Shown in pieces: positions 1,468 to 58,041 of a DNA stretch of 64,000 bases. Every line of letters begins with the position of its first letter. Within the stretch, counting starts at the first letter, position 1. This DNA comes from Octopus bimaculoides (Eukaryota): the NCBI RefSeq assembly GCF_001194135.2, contig NC_068991.1, forward strand, positions 8,087,354 through 8,151,353. Direction: 5' to 3'. Below the pieces are notes generated by a model. It searched no databases. It was not told the origin of the DNA and was given only the letters and a program-made list of their open reading frames with translations. A program made the translations under genes and the position numbers.

Positions 1468-1970
1468 AGGCTTCTTTCAGTTTCCGTCTGCCAAATCCAC
1501 TTACAAGGATTTGATCGGCTCAAGGCTGTAGTAGAAGACACTTGCCCAAGGAGCGATGCAGTGAGACTGACCCCGGAACCATGTGATTGGGAAGCAAGCT
1601 TCTTACCACCCAGCCACTCCTGCGCCTATGTATATATATATATATATATTTGCGTGAGGTGTGTATAAGAGATGAAAATACTGGAAAATATTTTCTGCAG
1701 AGTAATAATATCAAAAGAGGAGATTAGCAAATTGGTATTATTTATTCACCATTACACATGTTTCATTTGCTAATAGGAGATACAAAATTGTACATGTAGT
1801 AGAAAACATGTTAGACGTCTCTTATTAGAAATTCCTCAGACAGAGAATCAAATAATATGTTGTGTTTATAATGTTGACATTACTAAGCTGCTTATTTTTG
1901 CATAATTTGAATTTTATATTTTCTTTCTCTTATATTTTTCTCTCTTTGCCCTTTATTTTTCAGAACCAAA

Positions 1971-2129
1971 ATGTCACAACTAGATTCACTTGTAGACCTT
2001 TCAGAATCCCAACCAATGACAGAATCGACCGGCAATATGGACGAGTTTGACCCTTTGTGTCCAACATCAAATACGGAAGCCAAAGATGTTGACGGAGGAC
2101 TGTTAGTTGATCTGAGTGTGGAAACCCAG
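1971..2129 (+). CDS. Coding exon A of an unidentified multi-exon gene (exon 1964-2129, ATG at 1971): MSQLDSLVDLSESQPMTESTGNMDEFDPLCPTSNTEAKDVDGGLLVDLSVETQ
   Basis: Long pyrimidine tract ending TTTTTCAG (AG 1962-1963), AAAATGT start context, 53 open codons, donor CAG|GTAATT at 2130. The phase-0 end joins exon 27555 in frame. Confidence 0.85.
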
Positions 2130-2295
2130 GTAATTTCCAGAACTTCTTCTTCTTTTCATGTTTCTTTTGTCTTTTTATCTTTTGCTTATTTCTGTCATTG
2201 GATTGTGGCCATACTGGGGCACCACCTTGAGCGACACATTTTTCCATTCGAGTCAATACAGAATTACAGATAGTATTTATAGAATTTTGATTTAC

Positions 2296-2323
2296 TGTTG
2301 GATGACTTTTGGCCAACCCTGTA
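2296..2323. mobile_element. Isolated mariner-like terminal repeat (GACTTTTGGCCAACCCTG|TA)
   Basis: CCCTG-TA end like the element at 226-774, followed by a TA microsatellite and a gap. Confidence 0.35.
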
Positions 2324-2597
2324 TATATATATATATNNNNNNNNNNNNNNNNNNNNNNNNNNNNNNNNNNNNNNNNNNNNNNNNNNNNNNNNNNNNNNNN
2401 NNNNNNNNNNNNNNNNNNNNNNNNNNNNNNNNNNNNNNNNNNNNNNNNNNNNNNNNNNNNNNNNNNNNNNNNNNNNNNNNNNNNNNNNNNNNNNNNNNNN
2501 NNNNNNNNNNNNNNNNNNNNNNNNNNNNNNNNNNNNNNNNNNNNNNNNNNNNNNNNNNNNNNNNNNNNNNNNNNNNNNNNNNNNNNNNNNNNNNNNN

Positions 2598-2758
2598 GTT
2601 GCTTCACCACATACTGAAGTTCAGAAATAGCAGCTAAAACTCCAACAGATAGCAATACTTGTAACTTGTTTTGCCTTTGTGAGTTACAAGTATTGCTATC
2701 TGTTGGAGTTTCAGCACTTTAGCTGCTATTTCTGAACTTCGGTATGTGGTGAAGCAAC
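2598..2758. repeat. Long inverted repeat (about 69-bp arms, 15-nt loop)
   Basis: 2598-2666 pairs with 2682-2758 with one substitution and one bulge of about 8 nt. Confidence 0.9.
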
Positions 2759-3186
2759 TGTTGCTGATCCCTTAATTATGTATATATATATATATATGTA
2801 TATATAAATAGATAGATGTATGTACATACATACATATGTGTGTGTGTGTGTTAAGGATAATATTAAGAAAATATCTTAATACCTTAATTTTTCAAGCCAA
2901 CCACATGGAGGAATCCATGTGATCAGCTTGAAAAATTGTTAAGCTATTTATATATATAATGTGTGTTTGTGTGGACATTTGTCTTGACATCACATGATGG
3001 TTATAAGCAAGCAATGTTGTTTATTTCCAGTCTTTACTGGAAAACTTGGCTGACCATGTGAGAACATGAGGGTTGGTAACAGAGCAGCTGCAAGAAATCT
3101 ACTCTGACCAGTTCCATCATCTGACCCATGCAAGTATGGAAAAAGAGATGTTAAATGATGTTGGTGATGATGATGAAGATGACAAT

Positions 3187-3409
3187 GATTGCAGTGTCAG
3201 CTGTGGAATTTGAACACGATGATGATGACGATGATCACAATGATGGTGATGATGATTGCAGTGCTAGCTGTGGAATTTGAACATGGTGGTGATGATGATG
3301 ATGATGATTGTAGTGCCAGCTGTGGAATTTGAACAGGATTGTGATGATGATGATGATGATGATAGTAGTAGTAGTGGTGATTGCAGTGCCAGCTGTGTCT
3401 ATTTGAACA
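3187..3409. repeat. Compound minisatellite: four copies of a 30-bp core separated by variable (GAT)n tracts
   Basis: Core GATTGCAGTGCCAGCTGTGGAATTTGAACA at 3187, 3254, 3306 and 3379. Confidence 0.85.
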
Positions 3410-54779: not shown

Positions 54780-55014
54780 TGTCCCTAAATGGGTAGTATG
54801 ACGCCTGCTATTTACATACTGACTATGGACTCGCAACGACAGATTAAATGCATGTGTTCTGCTTACGAGTAAGCAACACGACTAATTACTCATAAACTGA
54901 GTGTAGTAAAAACCAGTTTGTGGTGTGGTGTCTGACGTTACCACAGTAAAGTTATTGTATTGTAACGTTACAAGTGAAGTTCAGTGAGAACAGAGGGTGT
55001 TGAATTACAAGCTT
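54780..55014 (+). promoter_or_regulatory. Weak candidate internal promoter or short non-coding exon
   Basis: Local CpG cluster, TGACGT at about 54933, palindrome TTGTAACGTTACAA at 54960-54973, TCAGT at 54981, GTAAGT at 55015. Confidence 0.25.
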
Positions 55015-55305
55015 GTAAGTGTTGATTTCAAATACAACTTAAAGCAATGTCTTGTTATTTCAAAGCAAATCAGAATATTTAATTTCAGAATAAAATAACC
55101 AAAAAATCAGAGGCATCTTTAGTAAACATTTTATTCTAATAGCTTCATTCTTCAAACTGCTGGTCTGTGATACCCACCCCTTTAACTCTTTTGCATTTAA
55201 ACTGGCCATATCCAGCCCAATTATTCTGCCTGTTTTATGTTCAGACTGGCTAGATCTGGCCTTTCACACCTACCTTACAATGTCATTTTAAAAATAAACA
55301 ATCAT

Positions 55306-55666
55306 AGGCGCAGGAGTGGCTGTGTGGTAAGTAGCTTGCTTACCAGCCACATGGTTCCGGGTTCAGTCCCACTGCGTGGCATCTTGGGCAAGTGTCTTTT
55401 ACTATAGCCTCAGGCCGACCAAAGCTTTGTGAGTGGATTTGGTAGACAGAAACTGAAAGAAGCCTGTATATTTGTGTGTCTGTGTTTGTCCCCCTAGCAT
55501 TGCTTGACAACCGATGCTGGTGTGCTTATGTCCCCCGTCACTTAGCGGTTCGGCAAAAGAGACCGATAGAATCAGTACTAGGCTTACAAAGAATAAGTCC
55601 CAGGGTCGATTTGCTCAACTAAAGGCGATGCTCCAGCATGACCGCAGTCAAACGACTGAAACAAAT
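55306..55666 (+). mobile_element. SINE family A, full length, nested in a piggyBac-like MITE
   Basis: AGGCGCAGGAGTGGCTGTGTGGTAAG head through to the tail; the flanks are the two halves of the MITE 55182-55741. Confidence 0.88.
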
Positions 55667-57277
55667 AATCACATGATTCAAAAACTATGTGAATAAATGA
55701 GCATAACAACTGATGGAGTAATTTGAATGCTAAAAGGTTAAGCTTTTTGTCAATCAACATCTATTGAACTTGTAGGCCCCTTTTCTTTCCTTCTTTGTAG
55801 CCCCTTATGCTACAGTGGTCTCATGCCTTGTTTGGGACAAAATTGTATATTAAAAAAATCAGTTTTTAATTCAGTAGTTTTGTTTAGCCCCAGGTCAGCA
55901 TTAGTTAAACAGACCATTGATCAGAAAGATTCAAGTTGTGACTCTTCTTTGAGAATGGTTGACTGTAATTTGAGGAAGACTTACTTGCTGTCTCTAGCAA
56001 TTAAGTGACCACAGTGCAAGGGTTTCCAAAGTTTCTATGTCCTCATCACTTTATCTTCCTTTCCTTAACCCTTTAGCATTTAAACAAGCCATATCCAGTG
56101 CAAATATTCTATCTATTTTCCATTCAAACTGGCCAGATCTGGCATCTCACACTGACCCTACAATGTCACTCTAAAAATAAACAATTGCATTATCAGAATC
56201 TCAAAGCTAAAGATAATGTATGATTGATTCAAAACAATGTGAATAACCAAGTCTTACATTTGACAATAATCTAAATGCTAAATGATTAATGTATGAAATC
56301 TGAATGTTAAGGGGTTAATGTGCAAATATTGAATAATAATGTCAATTTATGTTATTTAACCCTTTTAATAAACCTTCCTGAGGTTGCTCCCAGTTTTATG
56401 ATACAAAGAACGTGTTTTAAAAGGGTTCATATTTAAATTAAGATCTTCTCTCTTAATTTTATGAAAATGTCTCATTGGTTAAGTTGTTAAGAATATAAGT
56501 TTGTTAGAGCATAGGTCACTCTCAGCGTCCACTCTGTCACAAGCATTCAGACTAGGTTTCCGGTTTGAGGATACCTTCCTTCCTTCTACCTGCTTTTAGT
56601 GGCCCTGTAAAAGGTCATGGACACTACCTTTCTTTTTGGCTAAAAAGTTTTTTTTAAAAAAAAGTTGTACTCCAAATCCCAGTATTATAATGAGACAATT
56701 AGACAATTAGTCAGTTTATTAAGCCCTACCAAATTCTTGATTATTTTCAAAATTAATTAAAACAAAGTGTATGTTATTAAAACAATGATATACCAAAGGG
56801 TTAAATTTAAAACTTTGCAGGACCCCTAACTAGTCTTTGATACCCTAGTTGGAAACCATTGATGTAGAGGACCCTCTGAGGAGTAGTCGTTCTAATTCTG
56901 TAGCTTCAAAACTTAGTAAACAGAATTTAAAATTAAAATAAGATTGAAATTATTAAGAATGAGGTCAGGAGGATAAAGACAACATTGTTGTCATTATTAT
57001 TGGTATTGTTTTAATGTCCACTTTTCCATCTTGCATGGGTCAGATGGAATTTGTTAAGGCAGATTTTCTTTGGCCAGGGGCCTTTCTTGCCACTAACCTT
57101 CACCTGTTTCCTTGTAAGATATTTCCTCATGGTCAGACATGTTTTTTTTTTAACTAAAGGCTGATGATGCTGGCATACAAACATCTATTATAGATTTTGT
57201 GTATGTTAAACATTTGCCTACGATAGCGAGCTGTATACTTGGGTTTATTTAAGTGCCTTTAACCCTTTAGCATTCAG

Positions 57278-57447
57278 CTTACTGGCGTTAGGAAGGGCAT
57301 TCAGATTATTGGCGTTAGGAAGGGCATCCAGCTGTAGAAACTCTGCCAAATCAGATTGGAGCCTGGTGTAGCCATCTGGTTCACCAGCCCTCAGTCAAAT
57401 CGTCCATCCCATGCTAGCATGGAAAGCAGACATTAAACGTTGATAAT
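57278..57447 (+). mobile_element. RTE 3'-tail copy inserted in a piggyBac-like MITE, with a duplicated 5' end
   Basis: Tail sequence interrupts the MITE at GCATTCAG|ATTACTCTGTC; TGGCGTTAGGAAGGGCAT occurs twice. Confidence 0.8.
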
Positions 57448-57989
57448 GATTACTCTGTCAAATATATAGCTTATTTATTCATAATGTTTTGAATAAATCA
57501 TACATTATCTCGTAAGCTTTGAGATTTCAATGATGCATTTGTTTACTTTTTGAATGACATTGCAGGGTAATTGTGAGGGGCATGATGGGGTCAGTTTGAA
57601 CACAGAACGGGTAGAACATTTGGGCCTGAGATGACTGGTCTGAATGTTTTGTTATTGCTTTATGTTGTGATGTAAAGAAAAATCACACTTTTGGATAATG
57701 GTTGATGAGATAGAAAGCACTGGAAATAAGCTTTTGTGCCAAAGTGAGGGAAGATTTTAAAATGCTTAAGAAGCACGTGTCAAGAGGTTCCATTTCATAG
57801 CCACATGTTGCCAGACTAGACATCTAGACCCATTTTCTCAATGCATCTCTTGAAAGACGCTCTATCTCTGTCTCGCATGTAGAACAGTTGTGGTTTCGAT
57901 ACATCCAGCTGTTACTGGATCCTAGTAGGTGTCGGTTAGCTGAAATTTCAGTTGCTGAAGAATGAAGAAGTCACTTCTTCCACATTCCA

Positions 57990-58041
57990 ATGAAATCATC
58001 AGATGGTAATGTTCTCAGCAGAATGTTAGTGGGCAGAGCAG
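57990..58041 (+). CDS. Candidate exon E: short first coding exon MKSSDGNVLSRMLVGRA plus 1 nt, or a 39-nt phase 1-1 cassette at 58003-58041
   Basis: Strong donor GCAG|GTAAGA at 58042 in phase 1, the same phase as exon D. In-frame upstream TGA at 57963; TCAGTT initiator-like motif near 57949; alternative acceptor CATCAG at 58001-58002. Confidence 0.5.

What the first reader, a model, noticed from the sequence alone, without database searches (positions are those of the whole stretch)
1964..58041. One gene with a ladder of internal promoters and interchangeable N-termini
Seen: exons A (phase 0 out), B (0-0) and D (0 in, 1 out) join into one open frame. Exon C (32389-32733) has its own ATG and a phase-0 donor that fits D. 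D holds an in-frame ATG (52562) that a non-coding first exon such as 39283-39415 could use. Exon E ends in phase 1, like D. Inference: at least four or five isoforms (long acidic A+B+D, basic C+D, minimal MSNTNATFT-start, MKSSDG-start) share a C-terminal core outside the window. I cannot identify the core, and the long N-terminus looks lineage-specific.
Basis: partly seen in the sequence, partly recalled or inferred. Interest (0 to 1): 0.75.

Follow-up and report, generated by a model that had tools for sequence, protein, structure and literature searches.

The report
Octopus gene with alternative N-terminal exons
This is the 5' half of an uncharacterised Octopus bimaculoides gene with a long acidic N-terminal exon and one evolutionarily conserved alternative start exon; the proposed ladder of four or five internal promoters is not supported, and the layout is ordinary for an animal gene.

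Summary
Exons B (27555-28394) and D (52526-52589) are joined exactly this way in the public O. bimaculoides model A0A0L8FVI9, whose 3' tail looks like an ab initio artefact.

Exon C (32389-32733) is real coding sequence. An exhaustive protein search found one homologue, from one other unidentified species. It aligns from Met1. DNA similarity starts 2 nt before the ATG. Mismatches in the first 37 codons fall 7/4/26 by codon position (p = 5e-6; pN 0.16, pS 0.88 over the first 34 codons). That species also has a phase-0 GT at the equivalent place.

Exon A is plausible but unconfirmed. Exon E and the "non-coding exon" at 39283 are at chance level: about 10 E-like candidates are expected per strand, and 18 and 8 are observed.

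Verdict: two alternative N-termini are likely, the ladder is unsupported, and the kind is well known.

The parts
1964..2129 (+). Candidate exon A. ATG at 1971 and 53 codons (MSQLDSLVDLSES...LLVDLSVETQ, pI 4.05), phase 0 out. Plausible first coding exon of the long isoform, but unconfirmed.
   Evidence: acceptor TTTTTCAG|, caaaATG context, donor CAG|GTAATT, in-frame stop 20 codons upstream. Single copy in the window. No homologue found. Not part of the public model.
27555..28394 (+). Exon B. 840 nt, phase 0-0, 280 acidic and Ser/Pro-rich codons (pI 4.27; two YENV motifs and an SPSP-rich tail). Main body of the long N-terminus.
   Evidence: longest ORF in the window; 27624-28394 is 100% identical to A0A0L8FVI9 residues 1-257. 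Single copy. No Pfam match.
32389..32733 (+). Exon C. An alternative ATG-bearing coding exon of 115 codons, basic (pI 10.2), with a phase-0 GAG|GTAAGG donor. The first 34 residues (MNQVNFNVNGNQRLSLGARIAAVVRTDYDGNIIV) are conserved.
   Evidence: P0002, E 6.7e-9, aligned from Met1; the only alignable DNA between the two species is 32387-32498; codon-position mismatches 7/4/26 over 37 codons, binomial p 4.8e-6; pN 0.156 and pS 0.88 over the first 34 codons; chance expectation 0.025 per strand.
52526..52589 (+). Exon D. 64 nt, phase 0 in and 1 out (EEEIIKNGETQSMSNTNATFT). Common exon that accepts B and, by phase, C.
   Evidence: TTTCGCAG| acceptor and CTG|GTAAGT donor; the B-D junction is used in the public model A0A0L8FVI9.
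39283..39415 (+). Not supported.
   Evidence: only a TCAGT start after a CT microsatellite and a GTGAGT donor, both frequent by chance. No conservation or expression data.
57990..58041 (+). Chance level, not supported.
   Evidence: 18 such candidates on the + strand and 8 on the - strand, against about 10.3 (sd 3.1) expected per strand. CpG o/e is not raised there.
52694..53014 (+). Third exon of the public model A0A0L8FVI9, reached from D across a 104-nt intron. Doubtful, probably ab initio filler.
   Evidence: the model is rebuilt exactly from the window; no Pfam match; pLDDT about 30. It lies in a 143-codon stop-free stretch, 52594-53022.
62401..62537 (+). Terminal exon, with stop codon, of the public model. 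Doubtful.
9500..20000 (.). CpG-undepleted block (CpG o/e 0.7-1.2) between A and B, inside otherwise CpG-poor DNA (0.03-0.6). Possibly an unmethylated regulatory or promoter domain.
   Evidence: It contains several CpG-rich SINE-like copies. No Pfam match for the three ORFs tested there.

Best explanation
The window holds the 5' part of one + strand protein-coding gene of Octopus bimaculoides (public model A0A0L8FVI9, 'uncharacterized protein').

Its long isoform begins with an intrinsically disordered, very acidic, Ser/Pro-rich region. This is encoded mainly by the giant exon B, probably preceded by exon A, and is spliced in phase 0 to the small exon D.

In the B-D intron lies exon C, a second translation-start exon. 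Its first 34 residues are conserved in a distantly related species. Its phase-0 donor most likely also joins D, or an exon in the same phase, replacing the acidic N-terminus with a basic one.

The two N-termini would then sit on a common downstream part that is not in the window. Whether C is driven by its own promoter or reached by alternative splicing from an upstream non-coding exon is open.

Shown: exon anatomy, the B-D junction in a public model, and coding conservation of C.
Inferred: the A-B and C-D junctions, the shared core, and the promoters.
For: - Anatomy and open joins.
- B+D equals A0A0L8FVI9 residues 1-278, and the model is rebuilt exactly from the window.
- C chance expectation is 0.025 per strand.
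- C homologue P0002 (124 aa, E 6.7e-9) aligns from Met1.
- blastn of the 2.66-kb foreign contig finds only window 32387-32498, at 68% identity, starting 2 nt before the ATG.
- 26 of 37 residues are identical, with mismatches 7/4/26 by codon position (p 4.8e-6). pN 0.156 against pS 0.88 over the first 34 codons.
- The other species also has a phase-0 CAG|GT after codon 118 and a stop only 6 codons later. In octopus the read-through tail is Y-rich, intron-like low complexity.
- All exons are single copy in the window.
- CpG o/e rises locally over B and C.
Against:
- The C-D junction rests on phase compatibility only.
- The only database homologue of C is an unspliced genomic ORF. No spliced C+core protein was found.
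- A has no homologue and is absent from the public model. It is separated from B by 25 kb, 10 gaps and a CpG-undepleted block that could be the real promoter region.
- The public model ends the gene inside the window, which contradicts a core outside it. Those tail exons have no support either.
Confidence: 0.55

Rival explanations
1. One reading: at least four or five isoforms from a ladder of internal promoters (A+B+D, C+D, nc-39283 with the MSNTNATFT start, and E with the MKSSDG start), all sharing one core.
For: All pieces are phase-compatible and have consensus donors. One of the extra starts, C, turned out to be real coding sequence.
Against: E-like candidates occur 18 and 8 times per strand against about 10 expected. 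The 39283 exon has no distinguishing feature. The internal ATG of D has T at -3. CpG o/e is not raised at E (0.26-0.41) and only modestly at 39 kb. No 5' end data exist.
Confidence: 0.07
2. Exon C is not an alternative N-terminus. It is a small independent gene (ORF 141 aa in octopus, 124 aa in the other species) nested in the B-D intron.
For: In both species the ORF closes soon after the putative donor, and only unspliced ORFs are in the databases. The foreign donor CAG|GTAGAT is only moderate.
Against: Conservation is concentrated in the first 34-37 residues and decays towards the C-terminus (27% identity over codons 38-115, with no codon-position periodicity). The post-donor tails are unrelated (27 against 6 residues), and the octopus tail is microsatellite-like. 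A GT in phase 0 is kept at the equivalent position.
Confidence: 0.2
3. Alternative splicing from a single upstream promoter, not internal promoters. A shared non-coding 5' exon upstream of A would splice either to A or directly to C, because both A and C have acceptor-like sites before their ATGs.
For: A starts at a strong acceptor, TTTATTTTTCAG|. In the other species a poly-T tract plus AG lies 7 nt upstream of C's ATG, and octopus has CTCTGAG| 9 nt upstream. There is no alignable promoter-like DNA upstream of C.
Against: There are no data on 5' ends. CpG o/e over 32-33 kb is raised (0.81 against 0.30 and 0.38 in the flanks), which could also reflect a local promoter.
Confidence: 0.3
4. Exon A does not belong to this gene. 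Transcription of the B-containing isoform would start in the CpG-undepleted block at 10-20 kb, and translation would start at Met 27624 as in the public model.
For: The public model starts at 27624. The CpG o/e block of about 1 lies between A and B, as unmethylated TSS-proximal DNA does in mosaically methylated invertebrate genomes (own knowledge). The A donor is GTAATT, and 10 gaps lie between A and B.
Against: B stays open and acidic for the 23 codons from its strong acceptor to Met 27624. A has the same acidic composition, a good Kozak context and the right phase.
Confidence: 0.3
5. The gene ends inside the window as in the public model (D, then 52694-53014, then 62401-62537 with a stop), so there is no shared core outside the window.
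For: The model is rebuilt exactly with canonical GT-AG sites. The 143-codon stop-free stretch 52594-53022 is unusual for AT-rich DNA.
Against: The tail has no Pfam match, no homologue and no confident fold. The 52693|52694 acceptor is weak (TTTGAAG|). Such tails are typical of ab initio completion.
Confidence: 0.15

Closest known systems
UniProt A0A0L8FVI9_OCTBM (uncharacterized protein, O. bimaculoides 2015 annotation)
   Same: It is the same locus. 27624-28394 and 52526-52589 are its first 278 residues at 100% identity.
   Different: The model lacks exon A, the 23 codons of B upstream of Met 27624, and exon C. It carries a 153-residue tail from 52694-53014 and 62401-62537 that has no support.
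Reticulon genes such as RTN4/Nogo (A, B and C isoforms), RTN1 and RTN3 (own knowledge)
   Same: A long, acidic, poorly conserved N-terminus encoded largely by one giant exon. A short alternative N-terminus comes from a separate first exon in a downstream intron, and all isoforms are spliced onto a common C-terminal part.
   Different: No reticulon homology domain, or any other domain, was found in the window, so membership cannot be claimed. This is an analogy of gene architecture only.
Genes with several alternative first coding exons or internal promoters, such as PDE4D, dystrophin (Dp260/140/116/71) and plectin (own knowledge). The phenomenon is common genome-wide (e.g. PMC5470264 and PMC6825209, listed).
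   Same: Mutually exclusive ATG-bearing 5' exons in the same phase, upstream of a common acceptor.
   Different: Here only two N-termini have sequence-level support, and no promoter or TSS has been shown.

Membership tests
Gene with alternative first coding exons / alternative promoters | Two or more ATG-bearing 5' exons whose donors are in the same phase as a common downstream acceptor | tested here: met
   A/B (phase 0) and C (phase 0) both fit the phase-0 acceptor of D. The joins are stop-free.
Gene with alternative first coding exons / alternative promoters | The alternative exon is really protein-coding (evolutionary constraint at the protein level) | tested here: met
   Met for C: homologue found at E 6.7e-9; mismatches 7/4/26 by codon position (first 37 codons); pN 0.156 against pS 0.88 (first 34 codons). 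Not met or not testable for A, E and the 39283 exon: no homologues, and E is at chance level.
Gene with alternative first coding exons / alternative promoters | Transcripts that join each alternative exon to the common exon | not testable with these tools
Only the B-D junction is documented, through the public model.
Gene with alternative first coding exons / alternative promoters | Independent transcription start sites upstream of each alternative exon | not testable with these tools
   No 5' end data. CpG o/e bumps are only suggestive. An acceptor-like site upstream of C's ATG in the other species argues for a further upstream exon.
Reticulon family | C-terminal reticulon homology domain (Pfam Reticulon) | tested here: not met
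   No Pfam family was found in A+B+D, in C+D, or in any + strand stop-free segment of at least 38 aa between 52.6 and 64 kb. A core outside the window remains untested.
Public gene model A0A0L8FVI9 | Exon set reproduces the deposited protein | tested here: met
   The 431-aa protein is rebuilt exactly from 27624-28394 + 52526-52589 + 52694-53014 + 62401-62537.

The most novel reading that the evidence does not exclude
The 34-residue peptide at the start of exon C (M-x-QVNF-xx-NGNQ-x-LS-x-GARIAA-xx-RTD-xx-GNIIV) is an undescribed, cephalopod-restricted N-terminal module, for example a targeting or regulatory motif. It would have been kept under strong purifying selection since a deep cephalopod split and be switched against a fast-evolving acidic disordered N-terminus on the same, so far unnamed, protein.
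Probability: 0.3. Interest if true: 0.4.

Novelty: new member of a known kind. Interest (0 to 1): 0.2.

Why it matters
The practical value is mainly for annotation:
- The public model of this octopus gene is probably truncated at the 5' end and wrong at the 3' end.
- It misses a conserved alternative start exon.

If the C-type N-terminus is confirmed, it gives a short, conserved and currently unannotated peptide motif that could be tested for localisation or binding in cephalopod cells. The general principle, alternative N-termini on a common core, is routine in metazoan genes. Confirmation would not change any concept.

Tried and rejected
- Flanking DNA and naming the core. The look-up of encoding contigs for P0001 found nothing on record. 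A Pfam scan of all + strand stop-free segments of at least 38 aa downstream of D found nothing. My first attempt to pass whole translated frames was rejected because of stop codons.
- Homology. The word-indexed search with A+B+D returned only the protein itself. C+D returned nothing. The C/P0002 profile returned only P0002. Pfam and PDB searches on the C family gave only noise (E at least 0.6).
- Structure. AlphaFold2 of C (pLDDT 34) and of P0001 (pLDDT 35.5) was uninformative, so no fold search was run.
- Species of the runs carrying P0002. No paper mentions the run accessions. A0A0L8FVI9 appears in no paper.
- Rfam and tRNA scans of the window were empty.
- Rejected idea: that C is a repeat or transposon fragment. 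It is single copy in the window and shows codon-level constraint.
- Rejected idea: that 6070-6468, the only other C-like ORF, is an exon of this gene. Both strands are open there and there is no Pfam match or homology. This remains unresolved.
- Naming the core from memory (reticulon, PDE4, Kv-beta and others) was considered. It was dropped because nothing in the window tests it.

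
Full report
**What the window is.** It is AT-rich animal DNA (32-39% GC) with 13 runs of N. A search with the joined A+B+D peptide returned a single protein, UniRef A0A0L8FVI9, 'uncharacterized protein' of Octopus bimaculoides, at 100% identity. That 431-aa protein can be rebuilt exactly from the window as 27624-28394 + 52526-52589 + 52694-53014 + 62401-62537. The window is therefore a piece of the 2015 O. bimaculoides assembly.

**Checking the observation.**
- A: 1964-2129, ATG at 1971 in a caaaATG context, donor CAG|GTAATT.
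- B: 27555-28394, 840 nt, phase 0-0.
- C: 32389-32733, ATG plus 115 codons, donor GAG|GTAAGG.
- D: 52526-52589, 64 nt, phase 0 in and 1 out.
- E: ATG at 57990, 17 codons plus 1 nt, donor at 58041.
- A+B+D and C+D translate without stops.

On the gap question set by the scan's program: no N run lies inside any exon, so no reading frame depends on a gap. However, ten gaps lie between A and B and two between B and D. Exon order, adjacency and the absence of further exons therefore depend on the scaffold. Two 10-N gaps (8343-8352, 22568-22577) are flanked by perfect 183-nt and 72-nt duplicates. They are unmerged contig overlaps rather than missing sequence. All proposed exons are single copy within the window, of which 25% is repeated.

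**Is it more than chance?**
- B sits in the longest stop-free stretch of the window, 330 codons.
- In 200 first-order Markov simulations of the window, an ATG ORF of at least 100 codons ending at a phase-0 GTRAG donor appears 0.025 times per strand. The + strand has three: B, C and 6070-6468.
- E-like objects (ATG, at least 15 codons, phase-1 GTRAG donor) are expected 10.3 +/- 3.1 times per strand and are seen 18 and 8 times. E carries no information.
- The 'non-coding exon' 39283-39415 has only a TCAGT after a CT microsatellite and a GTGAGT donor.
- The ATG inside D has T at -3.

**The new evidence on exon C.** The word-indexed search with C+D found nothing. An exhaustive phmmer search of 1.84 billion representatives, using a chimeric A+C+D query, gave exactly one hit. 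This is P0002, 124 aa, E 6.7e-9, and it aligns to C from residue 1 of both proteins.

P0002 and two near-identical variants come from Logan contigs of about ten sequencing runs. The nine contigs read (L001-L009) are 99.3-99.8% identical to each other including flanks, so they represent one species. I could not name that species.

The contigs are unspliced genomic-type sequence. Between the 2.66-kb contig and the whole 64-kb window, the only significant DNA match is window 32387-32498. It starts two bases before C's ATG and has 68% identity.

In the first 37 codons, 26 residues are identical and nucleotide mismatches fall 7/4/26 on codon positions 1/2/3 (binomial p 4.8e-6). Nei-Gojobori proportions over the first 34 codons are pN 0.156 against pS 0.88. 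This is the signature of a translated sequence under purifying selection whose translation starts at that ATG.

Further along, identity drops to 27% with no codon periodicity. The other species has a phase-0 CAG|GT after codon 118 and a stop six codons later. In octopus the read-through tail is a Y-rich, microsatellite-like stretch.

The pattern is a short conserved N-terminal motif, a fast-evolving linker, a phase-0 donor at the same place and unrelated post-donor tails. It fits an alternative 5' coding exon better than a self-contained small gene, although the latter is not excluded.

**What remains inference.**
- No transcript data could be consulted.
- The C-D junction, the A-B junction and every promoter are therefore untested.
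- In the other species a long T tract plus AG lies 7 nt upstream of C's ATG, and A itself begins at a strong acceptor. Both coding 'first' exons may thus be second exons behind non-coding leaders. A single upstream promoter with alternative splicing is a live alternative to internal promoters.
- A block of about 10 kb between A and B (about 9.5-20 kb) has CpG o/e of 0.7-1.2, against 0.03-0.6 elsewhere. In mosaically methylated invertebrate genomes such undepleted DNA often marks unmethylated, TSS-proximal or regulatory sequence (own knowledge). This weakens the assumption that A is the direct partner of B. Part of the signal could instead come from the CpG-rich SINE-like copies in the block.

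**The core.**
- The public model continues from D over a 104-nt intron into 52694-53014 and ends at 62401-62537.
- These exons have no Pfam match and no confident fold. They look like ab initio completion, though a 143-codon stop-free stretch there is noted.
- No Pfam family matches any + strand stop-free segment of at least 38 aa between 52.6 and 64 kb.
- Nor does any family match the N-terminal peptides or the C family.
- The gene therefore cannot be named from this window.

**Mechanism proposed.** One gene gives at least two N-terminal protein forms. One is a long, acidic (pI 4.1), Ser/Pro-rich and presumably disordered form from (A+)B+D. The other is a basic (pI 9.8) form from C+D that carries a conserved 34-residue N-terminal motif. 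Both continue in phase 1 into exons beyond the window.

I put this at about 0.55. The estimates for the rivals are:

| Rival | Probability |
|---|---|
| C as an independent nested gene | about 0.2 |
| A not belonging to the gene | about 0.3 |
| Gene ending in the window as in the public model | about 0.15 |

**Comparison with what is known.**
- Architecturally this resembles reticulon genes such as RTN4/Nogo. There a giant exon encodes a long acidic N-terminus and a short alternative N-terminus comes from a downstream first exon.
- More generally it resembles the many animal genes with alternative first coding exons, such as PDE4D, dystrophin and plectin (own knowledge; general phenomenon e.g. 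PMC5470264 and PMC6825209).
- Membership of any protein family cannot be claimed, because no defining domain was found.
- The finding is a new, partly documented member of a very common kind. Its main value is correcting the annotation and flagging the conserved C motif.

Noticed in passing
window 9500-20000: A block of about 10 kb has CpG o/e near 1 (0.70-1.21 per kb), embedded in CpG-depleted DNA (0.03-0.6). It may be an unmethylated regulatory or promoter domain, or a cluster of young CpG-rich SINE copies.
   Followed up: partly
window 8160-8535 and 22496-22649: The 10-N gaps at 8343-8352 and 22568-22577 are flanked by 100% identical direct duplicates of 183 nt and 72 nt. These are unmerged contig overlaps, so the gaps and one copy of each duplicate are assembly artefacts.
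   Followed up: yes
window 52594-53022 and 62401-62537: The 3' tail of public model A0A0L8FVI9 has no homologue, Pfam match or confident fold. The 143-codon stop-free stretch at 52594-53022 is nevertheless unusually long for this base composition.
   Followed up: partly
window 6064-6602: A single-copy stretch is open on both strands (163 codons on +, 150 on -). The + strand ORF from ATG 6070 ends at a phase-0 GTRAG donor at 6468. There is no Pfam match. It could be an old transposon remnant or another exon.
   Followed up: partly
window 1971-2129 and 27555-28394: Short motifs in the acidic N-terminus: two LVDLS repeats (SLVDLSES, LLVDLSVE) and DEFDPL in exon A; two YENV motifs, YDTL and an SPSP-rich tail in exon B. 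From memory these resemble SUMO-interaction or clathrin-box motifs, LIR motifs and Grb2-SH2 motifs. None was tested.
   Followed up: no
L001 1861-2235 (and L002-L009): The only homologue of exon C comes from Logan contigs of ten or so runs of one unidentified species (SRR9969974, ERR12921338-40, ERR12945498/500, ERR14857108, SRR29271455/482). A poly-T tract plus AG lies 7 nt upstream of its ATG.
   Followed up: partly
window, many places (e.g. 771-1043, 21442-21705, 36690-36941, 51353-51535, 60565-61402): Interspersed SINE-like repeats and TA/CA/TAT microsatellites make up about 25% of the window by self-alignment. They produce most of the 70-200-codon stop-free stretches on both strands.
   Followed up: partly
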